Assembly: GCA_002269645.1 (NCBI GenBank)
Contig: NIVC01003190.1
Coordinates: 1-57,415, forward strand
Direction: 5' to 3'
Length of the DNA stretch: 57,415 bases
DNA from: Macrostomum lignano
Taxonomy: Eukaryota
Notes under the pieces: model-generated
What the model saw: the letters and a program-made list of their open reading frames with translations, nothing else
The model's database searches: none
Told to the model about the DNA's origin: nothing
Program-made: the position numbers and the translations under genes
Shown: piece after piece, positions 21,901 to 45,900 of the stretch
Layout of the letters: each line of letters opens with the position of its first letter
Position numbering within the stretch: the first letter of the stretch is position 1

Positions 21901-24900
21901 TTGCGCTGCCGGAGACGGAGCAGCTTGGCTTCTCTTGTTCCGACTGTGTAGCTCGGACACGTACGGGTACTGCTGCTGACCGTTGAAACTCTCCTCTATA
22001 ATGCTGTTATCGTCAAGGTCGGGACTGGTCCAGTTTCCTCTAAACTTGCTCTGGCAGCCAGGAGGAACCGGAACGAGAGTCATGTTTACTACCTGGTACT
22101 CAAACTGATTGGCACTTGCAGACTCAGGCAAAGTAAAATAGAAGTGCAGATCCACCTGATAGGCAACTATATCATCTCCTTGAATCGGCTCCCACAGCCC
22201 AGGCACAATGGTGGGTGACGTGGCGGTCACAGCGCTCATGTAAAGATCCACAGATATTCGCTCCGTGATGTGGATATTCAAAGTTCTTCCGAAATGAAAG
22301 CCCGATAGTGAAGAGTTTAAGACGAAATTCTCAAATCCAACCTTCAGTGTATCGTTGCATGGATCGAGGTCAAAAGTAAAGAAAAAATCTCGTTTAGCTA
22401 CGTCAAGGTCGATTTCTATGCAGCATTTGATGCCAAGACAGTCGAGATTGAAGGAACACTTTGCGTCTCGATTTCTCCACAAAACGCTGTCGTTGAAGTG
22501 CGGGCAGTAGGGCGCCGGCGTCAAAATTTCGCGCTCAACAATTTGCGTTTGGTTTTCGTAGCATGTAGCGTTTGGATAGGGTGGAGCGGGAGTCGATACC
22601 GATGAGTTGTCGATGGAGCCGTTGCATGGAACTTCAACTTCAACTATGACAGTTTCGTTAACGTACTCCCTTAGCGGATATTCATCAATGGCGCACTGGC
22701 TTGACCTCAGCAGATCAGGGGACACTTTCAGTCTGTTGATAATCAAACCGCTTTCAACATCCGCCTGAGACGGGTACAGGTAAGTTCCGTTGGACAAGCA
22801 CACTGGGAACTCAAAGTTCATGTTGTTCAGGATGTCAGCTTCCATTTCACATTTGCCTAGCACACCAGCATGATCTGTGCAGAGTGATGCCGTCAGGTTC
22901 AAGATCACATGCTTGTTGTCGGGCGTTCGAGTCATTCTGTATGAAGCAGACATCCACGGACCAAACCTGAACGTTCTATGCTCGTACCACAGATCCCTTT
23001 CCAATAGTTCCTTTGAAATTGTTTGCCGCTCAAATTGATAGTTAAAGATCATCGAGCAGGGTTCAACGTACAGCTCCGAGCGGAAAGACCAGTTGCCGAC
23101 ACTCAAGTTGACAGGCAAGCAGCAGCTCACCCCGACGCAGCCTTCGGTGAACTGGCACTGAACACCCGGTGACATTGGAGGCATTGTGAGATGCGGGCAG
23201 CTGTGCTGTGGGATGCTATTAAAGTTGCACGGGTAGCTGTGCAGCAGTGTTAGCACCGTGGCATTGTCAGCCTCTGTCAGCCCCATGCGGTTCAGTAGCA
23301 GGCTGTTCGCTCTGGAGTATGTTCCGTTATTAACGTAGATCTCTTCATCCGGCCACATGAAGCCAACGTCACTGCTTTGAGTGCACAGTGGTATCTTCAT
23401 CCAGAAGGTGTCTAGTATGTTGTACCTTATAGTATCGCTTCCTACACCGATCAGCAAATCCAAGGACATAACAAACTCTTTGTAGTCGGAGGCAAGCTGC
23501 AGTTGATACTCCAACTGCACTGCTCTGCCTACTTGTTCTGTGTGCTTAGTCTCGAAATTGTATCCCAACAGCGTCTTGTTCATGCTCCACCGCTCGAATC
23601 CCAGCGACAGTTGCAGAGTACACGGCTCAACGAACATCCAAAGCTTGAAGCTATGCTTTGTTATCTTAAGATCTATTGTGTAGCAGCACTCCATGCCTGT
23701 ACAAGACTTGGTTGGTGTGCAGCGCAGATCAGCGGTGTCCGTCTCATTTCTGACGTGATCTCGACACCAAGATTCCCAAATAGATTTTTGCAGATAGTCC
23801 ACCTCGCACTGCTGGTGTACATGTCATCGAACTGAAGTCCCAGTCTATTAAGGATCAGAGTGCTCGGCACCTTGTTAAGGTCGTCCGGATTGTCCACAGG
23901 AGGCCAGATGAGTTTGCCACTGTCGCAGATCGGTAGGTAGAAGAAAGTAGGCTGCATTACTGGCATTGGTGCTTGGCAAGCTTCGCCTTCTTCGAGACAC
24001 AGAATGTAGCCGGCAGATATCAGGGCGCCGCTGCCGGAGAAGTGGCTGTTTACCTCGTAGTACAGCTTCAAAGTTGGAGACACGGCGACTTCGTGCGGTT
24101 TGTCTGCATTGGTAATAATTCAAAGTATTTTTTGTTTAAATAATTCACAATTCAGTTACTTGACACAAACAAAGATAACCTTACCGAACTCTAGAGTTAG
24201 AAACGAAGCGGTGACGTGCCACTTTTCAAAGGTGATTGTAAATTCAAACTGGCAAACGTCGATAAAAACGCTGATATGGAACGATCGGGACACTACCATG
24301 AGGTCCATGTTCTGGCAGCACACAGCTCCGACACAGCTTGACTGCAGGACGCACATTGATCTGGGATCTGCAGCCTGAACATTGACTTTGTCTCCAAACG
24401 GGCACTGTGACTTATCGGGAATCACGAGAGAGGAGTTGTAGCACTGCCTGTCCATGAGAGTGGCCGGTTCGATTTTCAGCCGGTTTACTATCAAACCGCT
24501 CACCGTGTCGACTTGGTTGGGCGACGGTACTAAAATTTCAGATTAGTATGCATAAAATTTTATTACATGAAGCCAGAAACCAGTCAGACTCTAATTAATT
24601 TTTTACCTCCAGGCCAGATCAACGTTCCGTTAATGCAGGCCGTAATGGACAGGTGCAAGTCTGTCAACACTGGAACACTATAGCAAGCTGTTTTGAGCGG
24701 GCAAACCCAAAGCTCCAGATTAAAAATGAGGTCCTTCATCTCATTGGCTAGGCCGAGTGTGTACACCAGTTTTACATTCTCCCCGATGGAGTGCTCTGTC
24801 TTTCTGGCCCATTCGAATCCCAGCAAAGATCGATTGAAGGACCACTTCTCAAACGTAAGCGCCAGTTCGTACGTGCACGGGTTCACATCGATAGAAGTTT

Positions 24901-27900
24901 TAAATGCCACTTCGGCGACCTTCAAGTTGACCAGTGAGCAGCAGTCAAGGCCGGTGCAAATGCCGATGGCAGAGCAGCTGACCTCACGCGAGTCGGGCGC
25001 AGACACGTGCGGGCACTGGACACTGGCTTGTCCAAGGTCGGACTTCTGGCACTGTCGCTCTCTAAGCAGGCCGATGTCCATTCCGAGCTGAGTCGCCACG
25101 ATGCCGCTGACTCCGCGGTCAACATTCGACCATTCAAGCCTGGAGCCGTCCAAACAGACGGGAACCGGGAACTCCTGATCGTGAAGAATATTCGCTACTC
25201 GATTGCAATCGTTGGCATCGCAGTACTCAAGCGACATGCCTACTATGAAGCTTTGCAGTTGTTGCGCTTTTGCCACCTTGAATCGCAGGGTGAGCTGGTC
25301 GCCGATCTTCTGCTGCTGCTCTTCATTCCATCCAGTAAAATTCATGAGAGTGCCATTCAGATACCAGCGCTCAAAGCCAACTGAATACGTGTAGGTACAA
25401 GGATCGAACTGAATCCAGGTGGAGAAGCTCCTATTGAGCAGCTTGTAGTCCACTAGCTGGCAGCACTCAACTCCTAGGCAGCCGGGTGCCAGGCCACAAG
25501 TTGTGAATTCTGGCAAGGCAGGCACATTAGCGTGTGAGCAAGTCACATTTCTGCTCAAAATTTCGTTCACTACGCATTGACGATCCGCCAGGAAGTTCGG
25601 GGACAGCTTCAGCCGGTTAGCGATAAGACCTCTTGTGGCCTCTTCGACAGATTTGGCATGACCGGCCGCGTTTACTGAAATTACAAATTCAGTTATTATC
25701 AAATTCCTGATAAGTAATAGCTTCAAAGTACAAAGGAACTACAATACGGCTCACATTCAGGCCACACGAGTCCTGATGCTCCGCAGGCTGGAATGGGTAT
25801 CACTGCCATATCAAGCAGCTTGATGTCGAATGTACACTGGAAGTCGTAGCAAAACTCTACTGACAGCGTGGCCAACAGCTGACCGTCGGATGCTCGGCCA
25901 TATTCGAAATTGACTGACAGCGAGTTGCCAATCTTCTCCTTGTAGCTGCGACCTATGAATTTTTAGACAGTTGGTTTAAGCCTTTTTGAGCACACAGTTC
26001 TGTCGCAAATCGTCATATGAATAGTCTCACCGATATGATTAAGAAGACTAATGTTGAACTTCCAGTTTTCAAAGCCAGTTTCGAACCGCAGACCGCACGG
26101 GTCGATCTCGAGCCAGACGTGGAATTGCTTTTTAAACGATAGCAGCTGCAGGTCGACACAGCAATCCATTTCCAGACAGTCGTCGCTAATTCTGCACTTG
26201 GCGCCCTCAGGAAGATGCGGAGGCACAGTGAAATGCGGACAGTTCTTTCTTGACACCGCGGCCGAAGTGACGATTGAGCAGTTCTCAGGTTTGAACACGC
26301 CTGGAGGGATGTTCAACCGCTTCAGCGCTATCTCAGCGGCATTGTCCCAGATCTTGCTGCCGTCGACCTTATCAAAGTCCCCTAAGAGTGTAAAAATAAT
26401 TTTTTCGTAAATCCATTTTCTTCTGTTACCCCTTGTAGAGTGTTCTACCTCCCGTTAAAAAAGGAAAAAAGAAGATAATCGTATAATACTACTATAAGTA
26501 AGTAAGTACACGCATGTGCGCCTAAGCTTTGAATGAATCACGCTACCAGAAAAAGATGTTACCAGAATAATACGCCATGAGCCATTTTCCCCTTTTAGCG
26601 CAACACGTGAATTGTCATGATACTTGAGTTGCCGATGCATTTCGTCCATTTGCATTAGGACATCGTCAGGGTCTTTTTATTGAACGTGTTGACCCACCCG
26701 ATTCTGAAAAATGAAAGATCTCTTCAGAATTTTTTGAGAACTTATGTCAAGCCGCATGTGAGCCCTGAGATTTTTAAGGTGATTGTCCCAAATGGTAGCC
26801 AACCTGGACAACTGTATGGTCTGTGCAAAGTTCATAAGGATGGTCATCCTTTAAGACCAATTGTTTCGATGATCAACACTTCAGAGTATGAGCTAGCCAA
26901 ATTCCTTGACAATTTAATTAAACCTGTTATTCCTTCTGAGCACTGTGTGGGATCCAATAAACAGTTTATTGAGAGCCTCAGCAATACCACGATTAATCAA
27001 ACTGACAGGCTTTATAGCTTTGATGTTGTTTCACTGTTCACCAACATCCCTCTCGATTTCACCATTGAGCTGGCTGCTGATCTTGTGTATGAAAAAACCG
27101 ATCCACCTCCTTTCTCCAAAGCCACTTTTAAGAAGATGCTCAAATTCGCCACCTCCGGCATCTTTCTTTTTCGGGACAAATATTACAGACAGATTGATGG
27201 GTGTGCCATGGGCAGCCCTCTCGCCCCAACCCTCGCTAATTTATGCATGGCCCACTGGGAGAAGGACTGGATGGCCCTCCCTTGTGCGCCTCACTTCTAC
27301 AAACGCTACGTCGATGACACGTTTGCGATCTTTGAGGACGAAGCTAAGAAGGACGAGTTTTTTAAGTTAATCAATTCTACTCATGAGAATATCAAATTCA
27401 CGGCGGAGGGGGGAGGCAGGAGACTTCCTTTCTTAGACATTGACGTTGACGCCACCGATGAAACTATTTCGACCAGCGTGTATAGGAAACCTAGCTTTAC
27501 CGGGCTTATGCTTAGGTTTGACGCCTTGTGCCCTAGACAATGGAAAACCGGATTGATTCGTTGCTTTCTTCACCGGGCTTTTTCCACTTGCAGCTCTTGG
27601 AGACTTTTCCACAACGAAGTTGAAATCCTCACCAATCTGCTCAGCTACAATGGCTATCCTAAGAACTTTGTGATGAAAATTGTCAACTCTTTTCTCAATG
27701 ACAAACTGACTGAACCTAATCGGATGAAAGTTCGTGATTCCACCTCTGAATGTCCCTTGATCACTTTGCCTTACTTTGGTGTTTGTTCTATAGAGTTTAA
27801 AAAGAAGTTAGAAAAGCTGCTCCGTAAAGACTTAAACACTCAAATCCGTGTTGTGTTTCGCACCGAAAAGATTGCTAAGTTTGTCTGCAAGTTGAAATCC

Positions 27901-30900
27901 AGTGTTCCACGTCCTCTCGCGGCTGGTGTCGTGTATAAATTTGTTTGCTCTGAGGACCAGAGCATCTCCTACATAGGAAAAACTAAACGACACTTATACA
28001 CGAGGGTCAGAGAGCACTGGCTAAAAAACTCTGCTATTAACGAACACCTGCTAACCTGCAATTCTTGTTGTGAGGCTGAACCACACGAAATGATAAAGGC
28101 TATTGATTTTTGTAATAGAGATCACATGCTCTGCCTATTAGAAGCCCTGTACATTAAGACCAAACAGCCCACGTTAAATAACCAACTTGCGATGGGTGGG
28201 GCTAGCCGTCAACTCAGAATTTTTTAGCTGATTTGTCAATGACCGGACTGGCTTGAAACTGATATGCACTTTACCCAACCAATACTGTATCAAAAATTGA
28301 TTACTATGTACAAGTTTTAAACCATCAATTAAAAACTCAATTCAACTACTCTTGTTACTCTCAACTATCTATATATACTGAATATTCGTTCAAATTGTTT
28401 CTCAATAAAAAGACCCTGACGATGTCCTAATGCAAATGGACGAAATGCATCGGCAACTCAAATAATACTTCATGTTGATATTTACCTTTATTTATCTACT
28501 CTTCATCAAGCGAGCCACTTTACCTGATGTCATGATACTATTTTGGATCAAAAACTTGTCTATAAATACAAGCGATCTGAAGCGGTACCGGAGCCATTCT
28601 CCCCACGGAAGAGGAGCGCTCCGAAGAGGAAGCCTTAGGAGGACTTCCTGATATACCAAGTCAATCGAGACTCGGTCGAGTTGTTGCGGTAAGCCTTCCT
28701 TATTTGCGCCGTTGTGTTAGAGACGTCTCGCTCAAGTCTATTGAGACTTGAGTCTATTTGAGTCTGTTGAGACTCTTGAGTCTGTTTAGACTCCATTGGT
28801 TGCAGTCTACAGAAGGACTGCCCCTGATAGATCTTAGAGGACTATCAGTGGTTTCCGGAGCTATACCTAGAGTGCATAGAGGCACTGCTAGAAGAAGGAG
28901 GCTTAATTTAGACCGCAGTTTGGCGCAGGGATCCCACTGTTAATTCGGAAGCTTCCCATTGGTCCGAGCGACAGAATCCGGCCGGAACTATTTGAAGAAG
29001 AAAGAAGAATCGGACCCGCTCTACAAACGAAAGTCAGAAGTGACTATACGAGAGCAACTGAAGACAATCGAGAACTACTCCGAGAGATCTCCAAAGGACT
29101 CAAGGTAATTGAATACCTTCTGTTGACTTACTGGGTTGCCTAGCTGCTGAGCTAGAAGTGATTGTTCCTTGATTATCGAAAGTCGGGTAATAAGGAACAC
29201 ATCACCCTGAAGTACCATTACTTACAGTCAATCGTTCCGTTGGTGTGACACAGAGGCACCTGCAACCGCTGATTGTCAAGTAGGCCAACCACTGTGCAGG
29301 GCTGTCCTGCATCGTCAAGGCAGAGCTCGATCCTCGCCGTGAGGACAAACTCTTTGTCGTCGGCAGACTTGTCCAGGTTGTAGATCAGACGGACAGTTTT
29401 GGCAATCTGTTCTCGCTGTTCAACGCCCCACACGAAGCTCAGCAAAGTTCGATTTAACAGCCAGTTATCGAATGAGATTGACAGCACCATCACGCAGGGG
29501 TCAACGAAGGCTCGTACCAAAAATGAGCGGCTCACGATTCCGAGATCGAGCTTGGCGCAACAGTCCACTCCCATGCAGCCGTCTGAGTGGGCGCATCGCA
29601 GATTCTCAAGGCCATGGATCGGTGGCATGTGAGGACATTTGTCCGGTGGAGGAGACGCCAGGTTGCACTGACTCGGCCTGAGGTACCTGGACGCGATTCC
29701 CAGTCGATTAACCAGAAGGCCGCTAACGCTGCGTTCGCCGATGCTTGGCCAGCTGAGGCCGCCGCCGGAGTTGCAGCCCGGAATGGGCAGCGCTGTGTTC
29801 TCTAGGAAGATACGCTCGCTACTGCAGCCGCCGTCCTGGCAAATAGTTACACCAAATGTGAAAATAAAGTTTTGGAAGTCCGCGCTACGGTCCAGCTTGG
29901 TGCGGATCTTAACGTTGCCCAGCTGGTGCACATACGGCGTGCCAAACAAGCCAAAGTTGCCGATGAGGCTCTGCGTCACTACCCAACGCTCAAATCCGAA
30001 AGTGTAAATAAATTTGCAGGGGTCCACAGAAATCCAAAATTTAAAGCTGCGACTGGCCACTCCCAGGTTTATGTCCATGCAGCAGTCGATTCCGGTGCAC
30101 TGCGACGTCAGCTTGCAGCGCATCCCGGCGGGCAGACTGGGAATTATCGTGTGAGGACAGGCCGAAAAACTTCTTTGGATCTCAACGTCACCAAGGCGAC
30201 ACGAGTCGTCACTGATGACTCCTCGCTCCAGATTGAGTCTGGTCAGCACCAGACCGCTGATACCCTTGATTGTGTGCGACACCTGATCGCGTTCTGCAAA
30301 AAGTTGGCTCGTATTTTTATAAATATCAATCCATAAATTGTCAAAATTGTTTAAACCGTTACATGGAAAATGTAGTTACCAACTGTCCAGGACAGTGATC
30401 CATTGCTGTAGCACCGAGGTATCGGCATCAGGTAGTGGTTCAGGAAGTTTGTGTTGGCCAGCTCGCAGTAGCCCTCCTTGCAGATTGCCAGTCTAGCCGT
30501 CACAATAAGGTTCAGCAGATCCGGTGTTCTCGTCAGGTTGTATCTTAAAGAGGAGCAATGTCAAAGTAAAAAAATTGCGAGACATGTTTTGCTTGTTTGA
30601 AATATGTTCAGTGAAAGCAAAGAACCAAAAAAATTCATTTCGAGCGCGCACCTGAGCTCCACGGTTGATCCGGCAATCTTAAGCAGCTTGTCCTGCCCCC
30701 AGTCAAAGTGGAACAGCGATTGGTTGTAAAAGAAATTCTCGAATCCGATGTAGAACGAGTAGGTGCACGGATCAACCAGCTGTGTGTAGAAAAAGTGTCT
30801 GCTATACACCTTGAAGTCAAGCTCTGTGCAGCACTCGATGCCCAGGCACTGGTCATGAATCTTGCAGTTGTACGGCTCTCGGTTCAAGCGGAGGGTTACG

Positions 30901-33900
30901 TCGGCGAATGTGCAGTGCGGCGGCCACTTTTTAGCGTAAAGTTCAGGACGGCATTGCGGCTGTTTCAGCAGCTGCCGGTCAAGCTCGAGCCGGTTCATCA
31001 GCACTCCGGTGGCTGCGTCTATCGGGTTTTCGATTCCACCCTCAGGATTGAGTTTAGGCCATTCAAGGCTGCCGTTCGACAGGCAGTGAGGAATTGGCAC
31101 CCTGGCATCGCTCAGCAGAGGTAGAACCTCATCGTTGCAAGAGGCGTGGCCTGCGCAGTTGGCTACGTGCCAGGCGAGCTCCAGCTGGCCATCATGGTGC
31201 CTGTTAAACTGAATATCGATGGACAGCGCCTTGCCGATCAGGATCTTCAACCATTTACTGAAGTCGGTAAAAACTGGCCTGGTAATGGCCCAATTCTCGA
31301 ACTGAGCGCTAAAGGTCATGGCACACGGGTCAAGTCGCAACGAGGCGCTGAAGCTTTTCTCCAATGTGATCAGTTTGAGCTTGACGCAGCATCTCAGCTC
31401 CAGGCAGTCATCAGAAAGCTGGCACTGGACTGAATCGGGCAAGTCGCGAGTCAGCCTGAAGTTCGGGCAACGTGGGTTCGCCAAACTACTGCTTCCTGGA
31501 GGTAGGGCGCAGTCACCCTGTTTGAGAAAGTCTTTTTCCAGTCCGAGCCGCTGCATGAGCATCTCTCTGGCCTTGTCCACCATGTGGTCGCGGATGTCGG
31601 AAGAGTTGAATTCGGGCCAGCTGAGGTTGCCAGAACCAGAGCAGAGCGGCACGGGCAGCCTCGCTTCATTCAGAAGAGTAATCGGAGTTGCTAGGCAGTT
31701 GCCATCCAAGCACAAGTCGAAGGCGGCATCCAGAAAAAGCGCACTGTCATCTGGTTTGTGGTCTAGCTTGTACTTCACCAGAAGACTGTCACCAATGTGC
31801 TCCACCCGCTGCTCTCCCCATGGGTAGTTGAGGATGGAGCGATTGAACGCCCAGTTTTCGAAACCAAAGCTCACAATGTGCTGGCACGGGTCCACGAACG
31901 CCCAGGCCGAGAATGAGCGGCTAACGAACCCGAGGTCGAGGTCTAGGCAGCATACGAGACCCATGCAGAGGTGATGCAGCTGGCAGTCGGCCTGGGAAGG
32001 CAGCTGTGGCTTGTCAAAGTAGGGGCAGCTCTCGATTGGCGCCAAAGAGTTGCGGCTGCACTGCAGCTGCCGCAGAAACTTTGGCGAGACTCCGAGCCGA
32101 TTGACGAGCAGTCCGCTGATCTGATGGCCAATCGTCTCTGTAAGAGAGTTTTGACCGTTTGGTTTTTTATCCACAAATTTTCAAGTACAAGTATCAAGAA
32201 ATCTTACTAAATTGTTATCGTCTGCATTCGTTGAATCTAGCACGTACTACGAGGTAGTTCATTGTTTTAAAATATTCTTTTCCGGTGTTATTTAAAATCA
32301 AGCCGAATATCATTTGCGACTTATGCAAATGCAACTTAGAAGAAACATTTGTAAGACATTTGTGACATTGTAAGAGAACTGTTAGCACCAGCTAACTCAC
32401 ATGACCAGAATTAATGATAATTCTTATTTACAAAATAAACAGATAACCGTTTACAGTTTTAACCAACTTGCTCCAGTTCTAAACTTTGAATTTATCTCGC
32501 CCTCTGTGAGTCAAATACCGCTCCTGTGGACTGCACCTGCTTTTCAACTATTCTAATAAATGTTTGGAACGATAGCAGTGCCGTTTTCTCCCGTGTAACA
32601 TGCGGCAGTTATCGCTAATCTGATTGACACACACCACAGCTATCCCTGCAATATGCTCAAACCTTTGCTAGGCCAGAACAGGGTTCCGTTCGGGGCGCAG
32701 CCAGGGATCGGGACCTCGGTGGCGGTGAGCAGCCGCATCTCCGGCAGCCAGTCTCCGTCCAGTCGGAATTGCACCGCGCCGGAGATCACGAAATTCATAA
32801 GGTCCGGTGTCTTGCTCAGGGTGTACCTGGACAAAAATTGTTCGGGTAGAATTCGAATCATGATTTAACAGTTGAAATTTAATGACACTGCCATCAATAT
32901 AGGCCCCAGAAAAAAATCTTAATCACAACACTTGGACATATGTGTAGACAAGTACGTGTAAAATTCAATAATTGCAGTTGTGCGATCTGACCCTAACCCT
33001 AAGTTTAAGCCTTAGTCTCTTATAAATCAATTGAGCCACGCCGAATTTGCACGCAGCGATTCGACTTTATTATTGATTTTTGACCTTACTGTAATTTACT
33101 GATTCACAATTCAATCGTTCTTTTATTAATGGAAGCCTATGGTAGCCTAATAATTATGGCAGGGTTTTAATGTATTTTTTTTTATTTTCCGCACTGGACT
33201 TCAATGCGCTGCAGATGCCTGATGATGAGTGATTCATTACACTCAAGTAGTTTAACCGCATATTCTCTCTCAACTGTCGCATTTTTACTTAGTAGTACAT
33301 GATAAAACCTTCTTGAATGCTTAGCTAAACAAAATACGCTCGTAAATGAAATTTAAATTACCAACTACTTAACTTGAGAAACATTAGGAAACCGATCAAA
33401 CACACACCGAGCCCTTTAGCTACCCAAGTTTAGTAAGTTAACCGACTTACCTCAATCGAACAGCCTTCTCAATCTGAACATTCTGCTCGGTGCCCCATGG
33501 GAACACTATAAAGCTGGTGTTCCTGTGCCAGTTCTCAAATCCAAAATCGACAGTGAAGGTGCACGGATCGACTCTAAACCAGAATTCGAACGCGCGCCTC
33601 ACGATGCGCAAGTCGAGGGTGGCGCAGCACTGGAAGCCGGTGCATTCGGCAGTCGGCCTGCAGGCGATGCTGCGGTCCGGCAGATCCGGCAGCCGGAAGT
33701 ACGGGCAGCGACCGCTGGGCACCATCTCCGCCACCGGACACTCAGAGGAGCGCAAGAAGTTGGGCGGAACGGCCAGGCGGGTGGCCAGAATGCCGCTCAG
33801 GCCCGACTGCCAGTCAACTGAAAGCAAAGAAGAATGACACGTCACGTTGACAAGCTCAGAACTGGACGAGTTTGACAATGTAGAAATTTGGGGGCTTGTA

Positions 33901-36900: not shown

Positions 36901-39900
36901 GGTATCTGAAATTAACAACATATTTGTTATAGCTAAAAAATTCCCCCAAGCCAGCAGATGGCGGCTGCTGACTTACCGCAGCACCAGCGGGTTGCCTAGA
37001 CGTTCAGTTTTCCACTCTCCCCAGTCGAATGAGAACAGCGCCCTCTCGAACTTCCAGTTTTCCAGACCGATTGAGAATTTGTAGTCGCATGGATCAACAT
37101 AGGCCCAGGCTTTGACGGAGATCTGCTTGATTTTGAAGTCCAAACTCATGCAGCACTCGATGCCCATGCAGTGCTCGTTGAGGTAGCACTTCAGCGGGTC
37201 CGGAATGAAGTCGGGCAGCGTAAGGCCGGGACAAACTGAAATTTTTGCACGGCAGTGGAATCAAAATTTAGAGAACGTAATTCAAAGAGCTTGCATTCAC
37301 CCTGCCAGTTTTTTTATGAACTATTCGACAATTGCATTGATAATATCTGATATGTAGGTATCTAGGTTCCTATGCGGTGCTGTACGATCGTAAAAGTTAA
37401 TCTTTTCTTATTTCAAGTTGGCTTACTCTGAGAGTTAAAATACCTAACTAGACTTCAGTCTAAGCATGTGGTTCTGCAAAATAGAGTCTTTGAAAAAGTC
37501 TAATACCCTTTGGGCTCTCCGGCGAGCAGTTGGAATGCGTGGCGATGATGCCTTCAAGCCGCAGGTGCCGCAGCACAGCTCCGATCGCGCTCTCTGTGAT
37601 GCTTCCGCCCAACTCCTTGACGAAGTCACCAATGGAGCCGCCTGGCAGGCTGATGGACGCATTGGGATTGCAGATCGGAATCGGGATGGCGAAGTTGTTG
37701 AGGAAGGCCACGGGTGTCAAAGTGTCACCCTCGATTTTAACCTGCAGCTCAAGGTCCACGAAGTAGAGTTTCTTGACCGGATCCCTATCGATCTTAAAAC
37801 TGCGGGGCAGAGAGACACATCAGTTTTTATGTCAGCTCCGAATGTGCTTCTGAAGAGAAAAAGGAAAAAATCCAACCTGACGAAAATGACCTTGCCAAGG
37901 TCGAAGGATTCTCTACGGCCCCAGTCGTATCGGAACAAAGACTTGCTCAGCGTCATCTTCTCAAAGCGAATCAGCAGCTTGTAGTCGCACGGGTCAACAG
38001 AAACGGCCAGGGCGAAGGCCTTCGGAGCGATGAGCAGGTTGAGCTCCGCGCAGCAGCTCAGCATGCGGCAGTCGGATGAGAGGTCGCAGTAAGTGCCCGG
38101 GACAAATCTGGATGGCGCGTTTCCCGACGTCTTGAACAGCGGGCAGTCTGGAATTTTGGTTTTATACTGACATGAATTTATTGAGTTCATGCATAAAAAA
38201 ATCAGTACGCTCGTAGTGATGTTCTCACGGTTAAAAAATCCAGTTCTATTCTCGCATTTCGACTCAAAGTCAATGAGGTCTCCAATCCCCAGGTGTCTGA
38301 GCACAGCCTGCACGGCTTCGTCCGTGATCTTCTGCACACCTGTCTCCGCTAGGTGCCTGATAAAGTCCTTCACCTGGCCGCCTCCTGGCAAGCTTATAGA
38401 AGCGTTCATGTTGCAGCCCACTTGCGGCACCATGGAGTTCTCAAGCAGCACAAAGTCGGTGCGGAATGAGTCGATGGTGAGGCTGAGCTTCAGGTCCACG
38501 AGGAACAAGCGCCGATCACTGTCCTTGCGAATTGAGTAGCTGCAATTGAAGGTTAATGTGCCAGGTTACTTACTTCTGAAGAAAATAGCTTATTTAAATT
38601 CGTGACGCGATTTCCGTTAATTATCGAATAATCTCAGTAGCCTTGATTTCACATTTCATTGGAATAGCATAGCAACACAGATATCCACTTCAGACAGCAT
38701 CTGATTTTCAGGGTCTTAGCTAGCGCTTTTAGTTTGGGGCGCCAGCACCAAAGGCGCCAGCACCAAAGGCGCCAGCACCAAAGGCGCCAGCACCAAAGGC
38801 GCCAGCACCAAAGGCGCCAGCACCAAAGGCGCCAGCACCAAAGGCGCCAGCACCAAAGGCGCCAGCACCAAAGGCGCCAGCACCAAAGGCGCCAGCACCA
38901 AAGGCGCCAGCACCAAAGGCGCCAGCACCAAAGGCGCCAGCACCAAAGGCGCCAGCACCAAAGGCGCCAGCACCAAAGGCGCCAGCACCAAAGGCGCCAG
39001 CACCAAAGGCGCCAGCACCAAAGGCGCCAGCACCAAAGGCGCCAGCACCAAAGGCGCCAGCACCAAAGGCGCCAGCACCAAAGGCGCCAGCACCAAAGGC
39101 GCCAGCACCAAAGGCGCCAGCACCAAAGGCGCCAGCACCAAAGGCGCCAGCACCAAAGGCGCCAGCACCAAAGGCGCCAGCACCAAAGGCGCCAGCACCA
39201 AAGGCGCCAGCACCAAAGGCGCCAGCACCAAAGGCGCCAGCACCAAAGGCGCCAGCACCAAAGGCGCCAGCACCAAAGGCGCCAGCACCAAAGGCGCCAG
39301 CACCAAAGGCGCCAGCACCAAAGGCGCCAGCACCAAAGGCGCCAGCACCAAAGGCGCCAACACCAAAGGCGCCAGCATCAAAGGCGCCAGCACCAAAGGC
39401 GCCAGCACCAAAGGCGCCAGCACCAAAGGCGTCAACGTTTGTCACCCGATTGTGGAGCTTGCATGCACTATCTTTTCAAATACAACAGCTTACATAATCT
39501 GCAGAGGCGAGCCAATATTGAAAGTCTCCACTTGGCCCCACTCATAATAGAACAGAGTCTGGTTGTAGTGCAGGTTATTGAAACCAATGGAGAACCGGTA
39601 CTCGCACGGATCCAGAATCAGCCACATCAGCGCTGTCGGTTTAAACACTTTAAAGTCCAGCTCGGCGCAGCAGGTGACGCCCATGCAGAACTCGTTCAGG
39701 TGGCAGCGGACCTGGCTGGGCAGGCGCGGCAGGTGGAACACCCTGGGGCAACCTGTGGAATCGAGTTTGAGGATAAAGTGCTTCTAGTGAACTTTCTATA
39801 GCTGGAAATGACATTCAATTTATTCTGAACAGAATTTAGCATCAATAGACATCTGACTCTTGTACGAGCGTAGTGACTTCTAAAAGTAAATTAACTTCTT

Positions 39901-42900
39901 ACTGTGTAGGTTAGCAGTGGAATAATGCGTGGTTGGTAATAGTGGTTAATGTGTCGGACTCACGACTCGGGGTTCGATTTCCGATCCTACTGGAACAATC
40001 TGTTTCCTTGAGCAAGACACTTAACTATGCATTGCTTCAGTTCACTCAGCTGTAAAATGGGTGCCAGCATTAGCTGGGGTAATTAAGAGTGTGTGACCCC
40101 CCAGTCATTGGACTGAACAGCCGTGCACAGCCTTCAGATGTGCCGCGCAATGACTGCGACTGAGCTGTCAGTTGCACATCTGCCCATTGGGGCAGGCGTA
40201 ATTAATTATGATTAAAGAAGCTTAATGATTTACTATGTCATGAGGTAAATGTCAGTTCACAGCGAAGACTCACGACTGTCCCAGCCATTATTGAATGTGT
40301 TTGACGGCAATGCGCACTCTGGAGGATTAAAGAAGGCCTTCTGCAGGCCGAACCTTCGCACCACCGCCTCAAAGGCTGTCTGCAGCGCCGCCTCCGAGGC
40401 CTCGTTGCCGAGCAGTTTGGCGAAGTCGCCAAGCGAGCCGCCTGGCAGAGCGCCGGTGAAGTTCCGATGGCAGAATGGCTGCGGCACCACCGTGTCCTTC
40501 AGCAGCTTGACTGTGAAGTCGCAATCTCCTTCAGTGAAGCACACGGACAGGTCGAAATCTAGCTTCACGTAGTCCTTGCCAACTCGATCCACGGAGTAGC
40601 TGAAAAACAAATTACGGTCAGACGTATTTTCGCTCTGAGAAAAAGACAATGTCAATTTTTACTTTTCAGCAAAGTAAAACTTGATTTACTGAATTAAATG
40701 ATAAACAAACCAACTGAAACTTGGTTCAATTAAAGCATCGAACTGAATTAGTTACTAAAGGAGAACACATTAAGGGGTTGTAGCCTGGTGGTTAGAGCGT
40801 CGAACTTACGAATTAAAAGTCAGGGGTTCGATTAAGAATCCCACTGGAACAATTTGTGTCCTTGAGCAAGACAACTCTGCATTGATTCAGTTCACTCAGC
40901 TGTAAAATGGGTACCGGCATTACCTGAGGTGGTAACTGAGGGTGTGTGTGGCGACCCCAAGTTCTTGGACCAAAAGAAAGGCATTACTTGCCCTCCCCTG
41001 AGCAGGGCGTGCGGATACGTACGAGCTACGCAGTCAAACGCACAGGCACACACTCACACGGGAGTTTACAGCAGCCCTAAATTTATTTATCGTTAAGCAT
41101 GCATAATTCACTGTGCCTTGGTGTTTGGCTCTCAAGGGCGTTAATTGCAGGATCAGACCCGAGCTGAGATTCCAATTTAGCCTTATTAGGTGGTAATTGA
41201 GGGTGTCTGTGGCGACCCCCAGTTCTTGGACCAAAAGCAGCTGTACGCAGCCTTTAGATGCGCCGCGCAATAGCTGCGGCTGAGCTGTCGGTTGCACATC
41301 TTCCCATTAGGGCAGGCGCAGTCAATTAATATTACTATTTACATCAAATCTCAATTTGACTCACTCCAATCGAACGGCCTTGTTGCCAATCCACTGGGAC
41401 TTTTTCTGGCCCCAATGAGCTTCCAACAGGGATGTGTTGAAGTGCAGCGCACCAATGCCAATCGAGCTGGTGTACTCGCACGTGTCCAGCAGAATCCAGG
41501 CCTTGGCGTGGTAGTTGAGAAAGCTGAGATCGAGTTTGCTAGTTTTGAAGGCAAAGTCCAGACAGCACTCGAGGCCCATGCAGTTGTCTGCAACTCGGCA
41601 CTGCAAATTGGACGGCAGCTGCGGCAGGCGCACGTGCGGACAGGCGGTGAAATTGCTCTGTCTGGCGCACCGGCCCTTGGAGATGATCCTGTTCAGTCCC
41701 GTCCTGGTGAGCAGGATCTCCGCCGCCTTATCCAGCGCCGCCTGGCTGGCCGAAGTTCCGAGCTCGCGGAGGAAATCCTCGAGCTTGTCGGTGTTGCCCG
41801 GCAGGATTCGGTGCCAGTCGTTGCCGCAGAAAGGCACCGGCACGGGCACGCGATTGAGCACACTGATGTAGTCCAGTAGGCATGAAGACGAACCCGGGCA
41901 GATCGCCAGCTCCAGGCTGAACAGCGGCGCCTCATTGCTGGTTGGATTCTCGTTAAATCGGTACCTGGGATTCGGAATGCGAGTTCAGAGCAATAGTATA
42001 TGAGTCGATGCAAGAACTCAATAACCTGCTAAACGAAGATGTAAGCTCGAATATTAACTCACTTAAGCTTCAGGGCTCCAACATTTTGTAGAAATTCCTT
42101 GCCGTATGGAATCGCAAACAGAACCTTGTTGAATGTCAGCGAGTTGAAACCGAAGCTGAATGTTAAAGTACACGCGTCCATTTTTGCCCAGCCTGTAATA
42201 TTCGTCGGTAATTAGTCAGAAGGGACTATTCTTTCAGAAATACTATTGAAAATTAGCACTCACCTTTCAAGTACTTTGCAATCTCAAAACCTCTGATGGA
42301 AGCCTCCAGTCCCATGCAGCACTCGAACTTGGTGCAGTTCGGGGACACCTGGCAAAAGACGCGACTTCTCAGTGCACCAGGAATTGCGGCAACTCCAGTT
42401 GCAGCGGCCCGTTGCGACACTTGCGGAAGTGCAGTTCCGCCAGTTGCACCAGCACCGTTTTATTGCTAGGGTCGGAAATCTGCACCCCACGCTCCGTCAG
42501 CCCCTCTAGCAGCACCTCGTTGGAGACCTTGTTCGGCAGGGTGCAGGCCTTGGCATTGAAGACGTCGGCAAAGTCCCCCAGACCCATCGTCTGCAGCAAC
42601 TCTTCCCACCACTTCTGCATCATGGCGTTGATGACCGACGTAGAAGTCTTTTGAAGCAGGGACTTCAGGTGGTTCTTGTTCAGCATCTGCTGCCAGTTCA
42701 TCTTCGGCCAGGTGACCAAGCCATCTTTGCAGATTGGCAGCGGCAGGACGAGCTCCTGGAGTACCTGGATGTCCACCTCGCAGCTCGAGCTGGATGAGCA
42801 CGCGGACAGGCGAAGGCTGAACATTAGGGCTTCCTCCGACTTGGCGAACTGGTACGACAGCCGCAGCTTCATTTTCAGCACTTTAAGGAACTGCAGAGCG

Positions 42901-45900
42901 TCTGGCAGCCAGATTTCTTTCTCTTCGAAATCTGAAGTAAGATTGGCGAAAATCTTTGTTTAGGAAAAGCTAATCATTGATAGAGTACTGCTAGTTATTT
43001 TTATGTATCGGGAAACTAACAAGGTTACCTTCAGGAAAAAATCTGTTGAAATCGATTGTGTACACTATGGTCTTCACGTGCTTCATCTTGAGCCCGAACT
43101 CCAGCTTCTTGCTGCTGCCGCACGGGTCCAGCCTGGCCCAGAGTTTTGCCGCTTTGCGGAACACCTTCACCTTGAGGTCAATGCAGCACTCCACCGAGAG
43201 GCAGCTCTTGTCGAACTGACAGTAAACTGGTCTCGGCAGCGACAGCTGCAGAAGCGGACAGCCTGTGATGTTATTAAAATGAGATGAAGTATGAGCTACC
43301 GTCTGTATTTCCTAAAATATTGAATTCTAGAGCAAGCTTTACTCACGGGAATCACTCTGCTTCATCCTATCGATAAGACTGGCCTTTGGCATGACTTCCA
43401 CCTCCGATTTGCCAAAGCCTTTCTTAACGAGCTCGTTACGCAGCTCTTCCTCAGACATCAGGTAGGGGCTCTGGCACGGCTGATCTTCCAGTACATCCTT
43501 GATCGTCAGCAGTAGTTTATCCATTTTCTCCCTGGTCTTTTCGAAATGATTTTGAATCGCCGGAGCCTCTAGAAAGGCAACGACGTAGGCGAGTCTCAGG
43601 CGGCGCAAGCTGAACCTATCAAAGATTTTGTCGACGCCCAGCTTTTTTGGAAAGTCGAGAATGCTGGTTACCGCTTTGCCCACGTTGCCGAGAATGGAGC
43701 TGCGCGGCAGGCGAACTGAGTCAGCTTCCACGTTGGAAAAGAGATCGACTTCGTCAGTTTCAAGCGGCTCCACGGATTCCTCGGTTGCTTCTCTTTCAGG
43801 GCTGGTGTCCTCATCCTTCCGGCCTTTTAATCCCACGATCGCCCCTTCGGCGATCACGTTACCAAGTATCACCAGCTTGTAGTCGTCGCATTTCTGCTCC
43901 CACTTTGGCATTTTCATCACTCGAGGCTCAAGGTACTTGCTGGAATCCAGGTAGCGACCAGGGCCAGCCCTGGCGGATAGGTGAATGTGGTTTTCGCACT
44001 TGGGTGTCGAGCCAGTCACGCCGAGCTTGTCCCCAGCGCTCAGCTCCAAGCCCTCAGTTGGCTGGCTGTTTCCTTGCTCCATATCGAAGACTGGCAAGTC
44101 GCTGGCTTCAAATCGACCGTCATCCATCTCGAACTTCACGTTCTCCAAGATAAAGTGAAACTTTTCCATGCTGAATCCTTTCGGAACAATCACGAGCTGG
44201 TTAGAACCCTCGGGACCTCGGTAGTACTCGCCTTTAAACGGCACAACGACCTTTTCGCCAGGTTCCACGGCCAGATCCACGCCAGGATGATTCCACAGTT
44301 TGTCAGCGTCTGATGGATAGAAGCCATCGGATTTGCAACCTTTCCCGGCGAGCCGGTAAGTCCTTTGAAACTCGGAGTGCGCCCTCGGACCCATGATGGC
44401 TTCCGCTATGCTCCTGATCCTCTTCCAGCTCTCCTTGGCTCCTTGGTAGGCCTCCTTGAAGCCGCGAATAATCTGCAGAATTCCTTGGATCTGGTTTTCA
44501 AGTGGGCCGAAGGCTCCACGGAAGCCGCTCAACGGTTCCATCAACAGGTCCTGGACATCCTTTAGGAGGCCCACTAGCTTCATTGTTTCCTGAATGAAAA
44601 ATTTTGTTTTTTAAACCAAATTCACTGACATGTATAGACCTCAGTAATTTATTCATTACTGAAAATGTAGACGATCAAATGAACGATGTGGGTACTGTCG
44701 GTCGTACCGGTAAATTACTTTGAAAACAAAGTTACCAACAGCAACAACAACACAATCAAAACACGCTGTTAGTTAGTTTTTAAAGACTCAGAAGCATCAC
44801 AGGCAGTGGAGCGAAAGGCTTGAGCTTTTTGTAGAAAAATAAAACGAACTTGAGGTTGCACTTAAATATACTGCATTTGACAAGCAGAAATTCTCAGAGT
44901 CATTCTTTGCTAATGCATTTAGCGACTGAATTTTCTGTGAGCTACAAGGCTCGGTACTAAACTATAAGATAGTCGTAGACATTTTAGCTGTAAACTTTTG
45001 ACTATGCCAACCGGAGCTTCTACTTTCCCCACTTCGCAACTGATAAGAATTCTGTTCTATATTAGGAATTCAGATTTTCTTGGAAAAGCAGCAAATTCTG
45101 CACCAGGCGCAGATCGCTGAAATAGCTATAAGCGAGGCAGATAACAAGCCTGGTCCAGGGCTTCTATAGCGGAAATTTGATCGTGAAAAGTGGCAGGTAA
45201 ACAGAAAACAGGTGTCTCACTGAGTCCGACATTGCGCTAAACGGTCTCGTGCCGTTCTGTTGCGAGCCCTCCAGCGCTAAGACGGCCCGACGGCCTCTCT
45301 CCATGTGGCGCAGGGCCTCGGCGAATTCCGCCTTCAAGTTGCGATAGTGATCGGTCAGGTTCCACCAGTAGGGCTTCTCCTCTGAAACAAGCATTGTGAA
45401 GTATTCGTTAAGAAATGTTTTTTATGTTTTAGGTGCGACTTCTATAGATATAGCAGAACAAATTGCTCACCTTTCAAAAAGAAACACGCCTCAAGAGTTC
45501 GATTTTTGGCGTCGAGAAACCCGTTCACCCCCATTCCGATTTGGAAGAACGACTTGAATGCGTTCATGATGGCCTCCTTCGGGGAGCGGAAAATCCTTGG
45601 GAATATTTTCACCAGCAGATCCAAACCCTCCTTAGTTTGCTTTGCAGACATCGGGATTTGGTTCTCGATCGCGTCGTGTAGGGTCTAATTATTGGAATTC
45701 GGATCAGAAGCTTATCACACTTTAAACTATACATTTGAAAGTCGAATAACTGATTTCACTCAAAGTGCTATAAACTCACGTAATAGAATCCTGTAACATC
45801 GGCTTTGATATCGTTAGCCAGAGTGGCCATCTTCTTCAGTACCGCGAACAGCGGCCTCACGTGAGACGGCAACTCAAGCGGGTCGACCTCGGCCAGGATA

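What the first reader, a model, noticed from the sequence alone, without database searches (positions are those of the whole stretch)
22050..43262. Twenty-one copies of an unrecognised ~190-aa, ~10-cysteine repeat
Seen: about 4,000 aa built from a repeat with C-P...C-x5-C-x4-CC, W-x2-[VLI]-D-P-C, G-F-E-x-W, W-G, P-x-P-x-C and an N-R-L-G...Q-C linker. The copies are strongly diverged, so the array is old. It matches none of EGF, LDLa, CUB, TSP, SRCR, vWC or TIL as I recall them. Inference: a new disulfide-stabilised extracellular beta-domain acting as a stalk or a multivalent ligand-binding array.
Basis: partly seen in the sequence, partly recalled or inferred. Interest (0 to 1): 0.76.

Follow-up and report, generated by a model that had tools for sequence, protein, structure and literature searches.

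The report
Unnamed ten-cysteine repeat, giant surface protein
The window holds the middle of a giant flatworm cell-surface gene built from 21 diverged copies of a roughly 185-residue, ten-cysteine beta-rich module; this module is conserved in at least six invertebrate phyla, yet it matches no Pfam family and no solved protein fold that I could search.

Summary
The motif C-x5-C-x4-CC occurs exactly 21 times, all on the minus strand between 43221 and 22458, against 0.18 expected by chance. Spliced through canonical GT-AG introns, these exons give about 4,000 aa of 21 tandem units (173-248 aa, mean pairwise identity 26%).

None of the 21 units has a significant or recurring Pfam match at E<=10. 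A profile of them hits no PDB sequence. AlphaFold models are confident (single unit pLDDT 87, pTM 0.80; tandem pTM 0.75) and show a linker helix plus nine sequential beta-strands. Foldseek finds no PDB or viral match at E<=0.001, and every TM-score is below 0.3.

An exhaustive profile search finds 774 representative proteins. All 30 cluster representatives I looked up carry generic, domain-derived or apparently spurious names. They come from bivalves, amphioxus, a hemichordate, a brittle star and a nemertean, plus Macrostomum lignano, the probable source.

The array lies inside one gene of about 43 kb: signal peptide, vitellogenin-N-like head, M23-like domain, array, RNKR cleavage site, FN3-like array, EGF, transmembrane helix. 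I read it as an undescribed five-disulfide extracellular module forming a semi-rigid stalk. The stalk function is inferred, not shown.

The parts
42729..43467 (-). Repeat 1. Its linker is SAP-like (MSEEELRNELVKKGFGKSEVEVMPKASLIDRMKQ, 43458-43357). The Cys core starts at 43262. It has 9 Cys and lacks C1.
   Evidence: Positional ortholog of repeat 1 in bivalve and amphioxus homologs.
41826..42728 (-). Repeat 2 (245 aa, long linker insert). Contains an apparent 1-nt frameshift at about 42381-42384.
   Evidence: Positional ortholog of repeat 2 in homologs.
40470..41825 (-). Repeat 3
38413..40469 (-). Repeat 4 (lacks C8 and C9). One of its introns holds a minisatellite of 15-nt units, 46 copies, at 38738-39431.
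37670..38412 (-). Repeat 5 (lacks C8 and C9; two extra Cys in a linker insert)
36779..37669 (-). Repeat 6 (lacks C8 and C9)
35786..36778 (-). Repeat 7 (lacks C8 and C9)
34102..35785 (-). Repeat 8
32697..34101 (-). Repeat 9 (lacks C8 and C9)
31641..32696 (-). Repeat 10 (core in a single exon)
31083..31640 (-). Repeat 11 (single exon)
30411..31082 (-). Repeat 12
29773..30410 (-). Repeat 13 (first half of the tandem structure model)
29248..29772 (-). Repeat 14 (the unit modelled on its own)
25783..29247 (-). Repeat 15. Its first intron is 2,844 nt (29225-26382) and carries a Penelope-like retroelement.
25154..25782 (-). Repeat 16
24635..25153 (-). Repeat 17
23925..24634 (-). Repeat 18
23383..23924 (-). 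Repeat 19 (lacks C8 and C9). Apparent 1-nt frameshift in its linker at about 23814-23817.
22798..23382 (-). Repeat 20
22054..22797 (-). Repeat 21 (248 aa, two long inserts, lacks C8 and C9)
21931..21942 (-). RNKR, the only R-x-[KR]-R site in the 4,682-aa model, 38 residues after the last repeat. Putative proprotein-convertase cleavage site.
   Evidence: The Sinanodonta homolog has RRRR at the same place.
43347..44583 (-). Exon upstream of the array with a peptidase-M23-like domain. HPGVD (HxxxD) is at 44289-44275 and HIH (HxH) at 43989-43981.
   Evidence: The same weak M23 hit appears in the bivalve homologs P0006 and P0154.
45493..50438 (-). N-terminal exons of the same gene. The start MAESMNSQLCCFYLIFLNVIASAVS looks like a signal peptide. 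A region follows that is collinear with the Vitellogenin_N part of homologs.
   Evidence: Vitellogenin_N passes Pfam's cut-off in homolog P0006.
8613..21245 (-). C-terminal exons of the same gene: an array of FN3-like units of roughly 115 aa (estimated by eye) with a W-x-GF-x-D-x-ESGI motif.
   Evidence: collinear with P0153, P0005 and P0125. fn3 hit in P0125 at E=6.6e-11.
7661..8416 (-). EGF-like module, then the transmembrane helix LVPTLIALGVALVLAGAIIGAV followed by MLRSRLR.
   Evidence: sequence; weak EGF hits only

Best explanation
The 21 copies are modules of a real and so far unnamed extracellular protein domain. Each unit of about 185 aa has three parts: a short helical linker (...GLLVNRLG...), a small cystine-knotted N-terminal segment (C1...C2P...C3-x5-C4-x4-C5C6), and an all-beta body of nine sequential strands that carries DPC (C7), G[FI]E-x-W, WG, an optional C8-x4-C9 hairpin staple, and P-x-P-x-C10.

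Cysteines go missing in pairs, which suggests the disulfides C1-C6, C2-C4, C3-C5, C7-C10 and C8-C9.

The array forms the middle third of one giant type-I membrane protein, about 43 kb of gene on the minus strand from about 50438 to about 7661. Its order is: signal peptide, vitellogenin-N-like (large lipid transfer protein) head, M23-like domain, 21 modules, RNKR convertase site, FN3-like array, EGF, transmembrane helix.

The most likely role of the array is structural. I read it as a glycosylated, disulfide-locked, semi-rigid rod that holds the N-terminal head far from the membrane-proximal part. Convertase cleavage just after the array would either release that head-plus-rod or turn the protein into a two-chain complex.

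Shown: the repeat itself, its family and distribution, the absence of any match to known families and folds, the gene context, and the extracellular setting.

Inferred: the disulfide map, the rigidity, the cleavage and the stalk function.
For: Repeat and splicing. Intron positions and phases recur from unit to unit: phase 1 just before C2; phase 2 about 70 aa after C3; phase 1 after the W-P motif. Exon sizes of 259, 161-164 and 138-156 nt also recur. This supports both the gene model and an origin by duplication of a three-exon unit.

No known family.

Fold: the single-unit model has pLDDT 86.7 and pTM 0.80. The tandem model has pLDDT 84.5 and pTM 0.75, and both halves show the same strand pattern. 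No Foldseek hit reaches E<=0.001, and TM-scores are at most 0.3.

Family: 774 representative proteins at E<=1e-3 and 256 at E<=1e-10. The 30 looked up are from bivalves, Branchiostoma, Ptychodera, Amphiura and Lineus, and none has an informative name.

Cysteine pairing: C3-C5 are absent together in 11 of the 13 instances that lack either one, and C8-C9 in 16. C1-C6, C2-C4 and C7-C10 are weaker. In the window, C8 and C9 are never found singly.

One gene: the window is collinear with homologs from 47328 down to 8613.

Extracellular: 54 sequons, with 12 of 21 units carrying one at the same position. Partner domains in homologs are VWA, WAP, SEA, DOMON, FN3 and PAN.

Cleavage site.
Against: There is no expression, protein or functional evidence for this gene or for any homolog. 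Three literature searches found nothing.

The fold is a prediction from shallow alignments (41 and 17 rows). I had no coordinates, so neither the disulfide map nor the interdomain contact could be checked against the model. A pTM of 0.75 for a tandem is only indirect evidence of rigidity.

AlphaFold DB, HHpred and InterPro members other than Pfam were not searchable, so a distant known relative cannot be excluded.

The two apparent frameshifts (about 42384 and about 23817) could mean that this copy is decaying rather than that the assembly has errors.

The weak top Foldseek hits (lipocalins, avidin, PUR-alpha) leave open a binding barrel or curved sheet rather than an inert spacer.
Confidence: 0.6

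Rival explanations
1. The modules are ligand-binding units rather than a passive stalk. Each would be a small up-and-down beta barrel or curved sheet that holds a hydrophobic or glycan ligand, so that the protein is a multivalent carrier or receptor working together with its lipid-binding vitellogenin-like head.
For: The best, non-significant Foldseek hits are odorant-binding proteins, other lipocalins and avidin, all sequential-meander ligand-binding barrels. All nine strands are sequential with short loops. The same polypeptide begins with a Vitellogenin_N-like region.
Against: TM-scores to the lipocalins are only 0.24-0.26 and E-values are 0.18 or worse. No binding-site signature is conserved; the conserved positions are cysteines, DPC, GFE-W and WG, which look structural. 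Sequence divergence among the 21 units is large (26% identity), so a common ligand is not suggested.
Confidence: 0.15
2. The unit is a very divergent member of an already described domain family or fold that the tools available here could not connect. Candidates are a family present only in newer InterPro, CDD or PANTHER releases, or a fold represented only in AlphaFold DB clusters.
For: Only Pfam-A (2025 copy), PDB sequences, PDB structures and BFVD were searchable. UniRef labels one M. lignano fragment, P0001, as 'DUF1619 domain-containing protein'.
Against: hmmscan of P0001 and of every unit at E<=10 shows no DUF1619 hit and no other recurring family. The profile has no PDB sequence hit at E<=10. 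Foldseek finds nothing at E<=0.001 with two confident models. About 30 homologs are named only by flanking domains (SAP, Vitellogenin, VWFA) or as 'uncharacterized'.
Confidence: 0.15
3. This copy is a decaying pseudogene or an assembly artefact, so the array in this window is not expressed as one protein.
For: There are two apparent 1-nt frameshifts, one inside repeat 2 and one in the linker of repeat 19. M. lignano carries duplicated gene copies (background knowledge).
Against: All other exons, about 4,680 codons, are open, with canonical splice sites and recurring phases. All structural cysteines are kept. The database fragment P0002 from another assembly also appears frameshifted in one stretch of a different repeat, which points to indel errors in these assemblies. 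P0001 differs at only 4 aligned residues out of about 850.
Confidence: 0.08
4. The gene is the known flatworm glue protein Mlig-ap2, whose centre is also described as 21 repeats.
For: Same probable species. [quoted passage not shown]
Against: The Mlig-ap2 repeats are 255 and 221 aa, and that protein is flanked by vWD, TIL, C8 and LDL domains at the N-terminus and by TIL and TSP-1 at the C-terminus. Here the units are about 185 aa. The flanks are vitellogenin-like plus M23-like on one side and FN3-like plus EGF plus a transmembrane helix on the other. None of those Pfam domains was found.
Confidence: 0.02

Closest known systems
Disulfide-rich repeat modules of giant extracellular proteins (for example mucin CysD, ZP-N repeats, EGF/TIL/VWC arrays)
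   Same: Tandem, glycosylated, cysteine-stabilised modules that build long extracellular proteins. Copies are strongly diverged but keep the cysteine framework. Recurring intron phases indicate that the array grew by duplication of whole units.
   Different: The cysteine spacing, length (about 185 aa) and predicted nine-strand body match none of them. No Pfam model of any such family hits any of the 21 units at E<=10.
Sequential-meander beta barrels (lipocalins, odorant-binding proteins, avidin) and PUR-alpha/Whirly sheets: the best Foldseek hits
   Same: A long sequential antiparallel beta meander.
   Different: E-values are 0.08 or worse, TM-scores 0.2-0.3 and rmsd 7-14 Å. Those folds lack the N-terminal cystine-knotted segment and are not tandem extracellular modules. 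This is a resemblance of strand order only.
Large lipid transfer proteins (vitellogenin, apolipophorin, apoB, MTP)
   Same: The gene's N-terminus is collinear with homologs whose Vitellogenin_N region passes Pfam's cut-off. A dibasic site (RSKR) sits in that region, as in cleaved vitellogenins and apolipophorins (the comparison with those proteins is background knowledge).
   Different: To my knowledge, known members of that family are soluble lipoproteins without a transmembrane anchor, an M23-like domain or an array like this one. Vitellogenin_N was not detected directly in the window's ORFs.
Mlig-ap2, adhesive protein of Macrostomum lignano
   Same: A giant secreted protein of the same species with a central block of 21 repeats.
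   Different: Different repeat lengths (255 and 221 aa), different flanking domains, and no transmembrane anchor described. This is a different gene.
SAP motif (PF02037)
   Same: In bivalve and amphioxus homologs, the linker of the first repeat, or the segment just ahead of the first array, scores above Pfam's SAP cut-off: 34-39 bits against 23.9. The window has a similar helix-loop-helix at 43458-43357, and every linker ends in ...RLG.
   Different: SAP is known as a nuclear nucleic-acid-binding motif (background knowledge), whereas here it is extracellular. No unit of the window reaches even E<=10 for SAP.

Membership tests
   hmmscan of each of the 21 units at E<=10 lists none of these families. 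Only six unrelated one-off hits appear, the best at E=0.005. The ORF scans agree.
DUF1619 / Tectonic (UniRef label of the near-identical fragment P0001) | A match to the Pfam DUF1619 model | tested here: not met
   P0001 scanned at E<=10 returns no family at all. No unit matches it either.
Any family with a solved structure | A profile-to-sequence match to a PDB chain | tested here: not met
   hmmsearch with the 21-unit profile against 177,635 distinct PDB sequences gives 0 hits at E<=10.
Any fold in the PDB (lipocalin/avidin barrels, Ig/FN3 sandwiches and so on) | A Foldseek match at E<=0.001 or a TM-score above 0.5 to a confident model | tested here: not met
   Single unit: best E=0.084, and TM normalised to the query is at most 0.29. 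Tandem: best E=0.0015 with TM 0.11. BFVD: best E=0.07. AlphaFold DB was not available.
The unnamed ten-cysteine repeat family defined here | The framework LG-x10-C-x12-CP-x13-C-x5-C-x4-CC-x18-DPC-x6-G[IF]E-x12-WG-x34-C-x4-C-x12-P-x-P-x-C | tested here: met
   All 21 units align to it. 182 instances from the window and from other phyla share the ten Cys columns at 79-98% occupancy.
The unnamed ten-cysteine repeat family defined here | Homologs in other genomes detected by a profile search | tested here: met
   774 representative proteins at E<=1e-3 and 39 at E<=1e-30, with up to 15 stretches per protein.
Large lipid transfer proteins (for the whole gene) | A Vitellogenin_N (PF01347) domain at the N-terminus | tested here: inconclusive
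   The window ORFs at 46550-47032 and 49767-50438 give no Vitellogenin_N hit at E<=1. The region is nevertheless collinear with P0006, where Vitellogenin_N scores 34 bits against a cut-off of 24.
Peptidase M23 (for the exon at 43347-44583) | A Pfam match above the gathering score, plus the HxxxD and HxH zinc motifs | tested here: inconclusive
   17.3 bits against a cut-off of 28.7, E=0.0055. Homologs score 18-23 bits. HPGVD and HIH are both present in the sequence. No PDB sequence hit.
Mlig-ap2 adhesive protein | vWD/TIL/C8/LDL at the N-terminus, TIL/TSP-1 at the C-terminus, and repeats of 255 and 221 aa | tested here: not met
   None of these Pfam domains occurs in the window's ORFs. The unit length is about 185 aa. 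The description of Mlig-ap2 is from PMC8621496.

The most novel reading that the evidence does not exclude
The module is a genuinely new protein fold, and the gene is an ancient bilaterian giant surface protein lost from the usual model organisms. No vertebrate or ecdysozoan was among the 30 hits I looked up, but I did not tabulate the other roughly 740. In this reading the protein joins a lipid-transfer-type head and a metal-binding M23-like domain to a 21-module rod and an FN3-like membrane anchor. That would make it a new class of extracellular matrix or lipid-handling receptor of marine invertebrate epithelia.
Probability: 0.3. Interest if true: 0.7.

Novelty: new variant of a known kind. 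Interest (0 to 1): 0.55.

Why it matters
Disulfide-rich extracellular repeats are a familiar kind of building block, but this one has no name, no Pfam model, no solved relative and no literature that I could find. Even so, it is conserved in flatworms, nemerteans, bivalves, echinoderms, hemichordates and amphioxus, and it makes up thousands of residues of very large proteins.

Defining it would turn hundreds of 'uncharacterized' invertebrate gene models into an annotated family. It may also add a new fold.

It would bring into view a conserved giant gene that combines a vitellogenin-type head with an M23-like domain and a membrane anchor. To my knowledge that architecture has not been described. 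Macrostomum lignano has working RNAi and in situ methods (used in PMC8621496), so the function is directly testable.

Tried and rejected
1. Prokaryotic reading. ORFs are fragmentary and follow GT-AG introns, so the sequence is eukaryotic.

2. Word-indexed homolog search with the 21-unit alignment. It returned nothing, although the single-ORF query had found 3 proteins. The exhaustive profile search was used instead.

4. The DUF1619/Tectonic label of P0001 was not reproduced.

5. SAP as the identity of every linker. It is above the Pfam threshold only in some homologs and is not detected in the window.

6. Mlig-ap2 identity was rejected on repeat length and flanking domains.

7. One-to-one orthology of all 21 repeats with those of other phyla. 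Only repeats 1 and 2 map clearly; the rest have no clear best partner.

8. Alternative short introns at the two frame breaks. These would delete C2/C3 or the NRLG linker, so I preferred a 1-nt indel.

9. Fetching the M. lignano locus of P0001 for an independent copy. It is not on record.

10. Literature searches by domain combination and by accession found nothing.

11. PDB sequence searches with the FN3-like ORF and with the M23-like ORF gave no meaningful hits.

Full report
**What the sequence is**

The window is eukaryotic. Long minus-strand ORFs are broken into pieces that join through canonical GT...AG introns. The closest database proteins are two UniRef fragments from the flatworm Macrostomum lignano. 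One of them, P0001, differs from my spliced model at only 4 aligned residues; the two gaps are gene-model differences. The window is therefore very probably M. lignano. The next hit is a brittle-star protein (Amphiura filiformis, P0003) at 31% identity.

**Checking the observation**

The strict motif C-x5-C-x4-CC occurs 21 times in the six-frame translation. All 21 are on the minus strand, between 43221 and 22458. Shuffled copies of the window give a mean of 0.18 and a maximum of 2. A profile built from seven intact single-exon units finds 21 units, many of them split near profile position 110.

I joined the pieces by choosing, at each gap, the GT-AG pair that keeps the frame and best fits the profile and the splice consensus. 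The result is 27 introns and two places where the frame shifts by one base with no room for an intron. One is near 42384, inside repeat 2; the other is near 23817, in the linker of repeat 19. With an X placed at each of these two points, 4,682 codons read through without a stop.

The array covers residues 414-4408 of that model: 3,995 aa, 199 Cys and 54 N-x-S/T sequons. The 21 units are 173-248 aa long and 16-43% identical to one another, mean 26%. Seven cysteine columns are invariant and an eighth is at least 90% conserved.

**Anatomy of one unit**

The consensus over 182 instances, from the window and from homologs, is:

...ll..LGl-x10-C1-x12-C2P-x6-LP-x4-C3-x5-C4-[TM]G[VI]xC5C6-x18-DPC7-x6-G[IF]E-x7-L-x4-WG-x34-C8-x4-C9-x12-P-x-P-x-C10.

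After C10 comes a frequent N-G-[ST]-L-x-W-P stretch.

Twelve of the 21 units carry a sequon at the same alignment position, just after GFE-x-W.

In the window, C8 and C9 are present together in 14 units and absent together in 7, and are never found singly. Across the 182 instances, absences pair up. C3-C5 are absent together in 11 of the 13 instances that lack either one, and C8-C9 in 16. C1-C6 (5 of 11), C2-C4 (3 of 5) and C7-C10 (5 of 20) are weaker. I infer five disulfides with that pairing. This is an inference from co-absence, not a measurement.

**Exon structure**

Intron positions and phases recur from unit to unit:
- phase 1 immediately before C2, in R1, R4, R6, R7 and R8;
- phase 2 about 70 residues after C3, in nine units;
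- phase 1 after the W-P motif, in eight units.

Exon lengths of 259, 161-164 and 138-156 nt also recur. This supports the gene model. It also indicates that the array grew by duplication of a three-exon unit, with later intron loss in R10-R11, R13-R14, R16-R17 and R19-R21.

**Is it a known domain?**

I found no evidence that it is.
- hmmscan of ORFs covering the array, and of each of the 21 units at E<=10, finds no recurring Pfam-A family. It finds none of EGF, LDLa, CUB, TSP1, SRCR, VWC or TIL.
- The UniRef label 'DUF1619 domain-containing' on P0001 is not reproduced.
- A profile of the units has no hit at E<=10 among 177,635 distinct PDB sequences.
- AlphaFold2 on repeat 14, with a 41-row alignment of exon-exact pieces plus the Amphiura repeats, gives pLDDT 86.7 and pTM 0.80: one linker helix, an irregular cysteine-rich segment, then nine sequential strands.
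- A tandem R13-R14 model gives pLDDT 84.5 and pTM 0.75, with the same pattern in both halves.
- Foldseek finds nothing at E<=0.001 in the PDB or BFVD. The best single-unit hits (PUR-alpha, odorant-binding proteins and other lipocalins, Whirly, avidin) have TM-scores of 0.2-0.3. The tandem hits are propellers at TM about 0.1.

Within the limits of these libraries the unit is an unassigned family and possibly a new fold. AlphaFold DB, HHpred and the non-Pfam members of InterPro were not available.

**The family**

An exhaustive profile search of 1.84 billion representative proteins finds 774 at E<=1e-3, 256 at E<=1e-10 and 39 at E<=1e-30, with up to 15 stretches per protein.

I looked up the names of 30 cluster representatives. 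They come from bivalves (Potamilus, Sinanodonta, Mytilus, Mya, Argopecten), amphioxus (Branchiostoma), a hemichordate (Ptychodera) and a nemertean (Lineus). Amphiura and Macrostomum add two more groups. Almost all are 'hypothetical' or 'uncharacterized', or are named only after a flanking domain: Vitellogenin, SAP or VWFA. One (P0036) carries a helicase name and has DEAD-box helicase domains in Pfam, which I take to be a fused gene model. Three literature searches found no description of the family.

**Gene context**

tblastn with the long homologs shows that the window is collinear with them from 47328 down to about 8613. At lower stringency the collinearity reaches up to about 50339. The array is therefore the middle of one gene of about 43 kb on the minus strand.
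- It starts at the ATG at 50438 with MAESMNSQLCCFYLIFLNVIASAVS, which looks like a signal peptide.
- A region follows that is collinear with the Vitellogenin_N/HEAT part of homologs. That domain passes Pfam's cut-off in P0006 and falls just below it in P0011. It was not detected directly in the window's ORFs.
- The exon at 44583-43347 has a weak Peptidase_M23 match (E=0.0055), which recurs in the bivalve homologs, and it contains HPGVD and HIH motifs.
- Just before repeat 1 there is a SAP-like helix-loop-helix. In four homologs a SAP hit passes Pfam's cut-off (34-39 bits). In two of them it falls in the linker of the first repeat, and in the others just ahead of the first array.
- After repeat 21 comes RNKR, the only R-x-[KR]-R in the 4,682 residues. 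Sinanodonta has RRRR and Branchiostoma has VKR at the same place.
- Downstream, 21245-8613 encodes an array of FN3-like units of roughly 115 aa with a W-x-GF-x-D-x-ESGI motif. The Ptychodera homolog has an fn3 hit at E=6.6e-11 in this region.
- The gene ends with an EGF-like module and the transmembrane helix LVPTLIALGVALVLAGAIIGAV followed by MLRSRLR.

In other homologs the module sits next to VWA, WAP, SEA, DOMON and PAN domains. Together with the sequons and the cysteines, this places the module outside the cell.

**Age of the array**

Repeats 1 and 2 each have a clear best partner at the same position in bivalve and amphioxus proteins. For example, R1 scores 100 bits against 41 for the runner-up in P0154, and R2 scores 92 against 52 in P0157. 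Later repeats have no clear best partner. The module, and at least the start of the array, therefore predate the split between Spiralia and Deuterostomia. Whether the full 21-unit array is that old cannot be decided from these data.

**How it most likely works**

I commit to a structural reading. The units are glycosylated, disulfide-locked beta modules joined by short helices. They form a semi-rigid rod that carries the vitellogenin-like and M23-like head away from the membrane-proximal FN3-like array. Convertase cleavage at RNKR may separate the two halves.

In favour of this reading:
- the conserved positions are framework residues rather than a pocket;
- the units are highly diverged from one another;
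- the tandem model has a fairly high pTM;
- the flanking architecture fits.

This part is inference. I give about 0.9 to 'a real, unnamed extracellular domain family' and about 0.5 to 'mainly a stalk'.

**Rival readings**
- A multivalent ligand-binding array, suggested only by weak lipocalin-like Foldseek hits and by the lipid-transfer-type head.
- A distant member of a known family that these tools missed.
- A decaying copy, because of the two frameshifts. Against this, every other exon is intact, and the fragment P0002 from another assembly appears frameshifted in a different repeat, which looks like assembly indels.
- Identity with the glue protein Mlig-ap2, which also has '21 repeats'. I reject this on repeat length (255 and 221 aa) and on its vWD/TIL/LDL/TSP-1 flanks.

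**Verdict**

It is a new domain family of a familiar general kind, sitting in an undescribed giant gene that is conserved across at least six phyla. Interest is moderate to good. It would rise if searches of AlphaFold DB and HHpred confirm a new fold, or if RNAi in M. lignano gives a phenotype.

Noticed in passing
26680-28227 (+), inside the 2,844-nt intron between repeats 14 and 15 (29225-26382): An intact 515-aa ORF with a reverse-transcriptase domain (RVT_1, E=3e-9) followed by a GIY-YIG nuclease domain (E=1.5e-6). This is the domain pair of a Penelope-like retroelement. It lies antisense to the host gene.
   Followed up: partly
43347-44583 (-): The exon just upstream of the array has a sub-threshold Peptidase_M23 match (17 bits, E=0.0055), and the bivalve homologs show the same weak hit. 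The zinc-site motifs HxxxD (HPGVD, 44289-44275) and HxH (HIH, 43989-43981) are both present. An M23-type domain in an animal surface protein next to a vitellogenin-like head is unusual.
   Followed up: partly
45493-50438 (-): The N-terminal exons are collinear with the Vitellogenin_N/HEAT region of bivalve and amphioxus homologs. They begin with a signal-peptide-like MAESMNSQLCCFYLIFLNVIASAVS. A dibasic RSKR site aligns with RQKR or RQRR in the homologs.
   Followed up: partly
7661-21245 (-): A second, different repeat array lies in the same gene: FN3-like units of roughly 115 aa with a recurring D-x-[ST]-x-P...W-x-GF-x-D-x-ESGI...Y pattern and no significant Pfam hit in the window. It is followed by an EGF-like module and a transmembrane helix.
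   Followed up: partly
about 42381-42384 and about 23814-23817 (-): Two apparent single-base frameshifts occur inside otherwise intact coding exons. They could be assembly indels or real lesions. A database fragment from another M. lignano assembly (P0002) appears frameshifted in a different repeat.
   Followed up: partly
21931-21942 (-): RNKR, the only furin-type site in the 4,682-aa model, lies 38 residues after the last repeat. A basic site occupies the same position in the Sinanodonta (RRRR) and Branchiostoma (VKR) homologs.
   Followed up: partly
38738-39431; 48996-49757; 50470-51314; 56417-57402; 7017-7257; 144-427: Several minisatellites are present. A 15-nt unit in 46 copies at 99% identity lies in an intron of repeat 4. 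A 41-nt unit in 19 copies lies in an intron of the N-terminal region. A 24-nt unit in about 35 copies sits immediately upstream of the putative start codon. A 35-nt unit in 28 copies lies at the right end of the window.
   Followed up: no
54870-55472 (+): A neighbouring gene on the other strand encodes a Mob1/phocein family protein (E=1.5e-60).
   Followed up: yes
L001 (Amphiura filiformis CM076860.1, 29658871-29685682): Four consecutive same-strand gene models (1644, 627, 777 and 3771 aa), none with any Pfam hit, surround the brittle-star homolog. They are probably fragments of one giant orthologous gene that the annotation split.
   Followed up: no
3196-4044 (+): A 282-aa ORF with several hydrophobic stretches, judged by eye from the sequence, and no Pfam match. 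It may be a small multi-pass membrane protein gene downstream of the giant gene.
   Followed up: no
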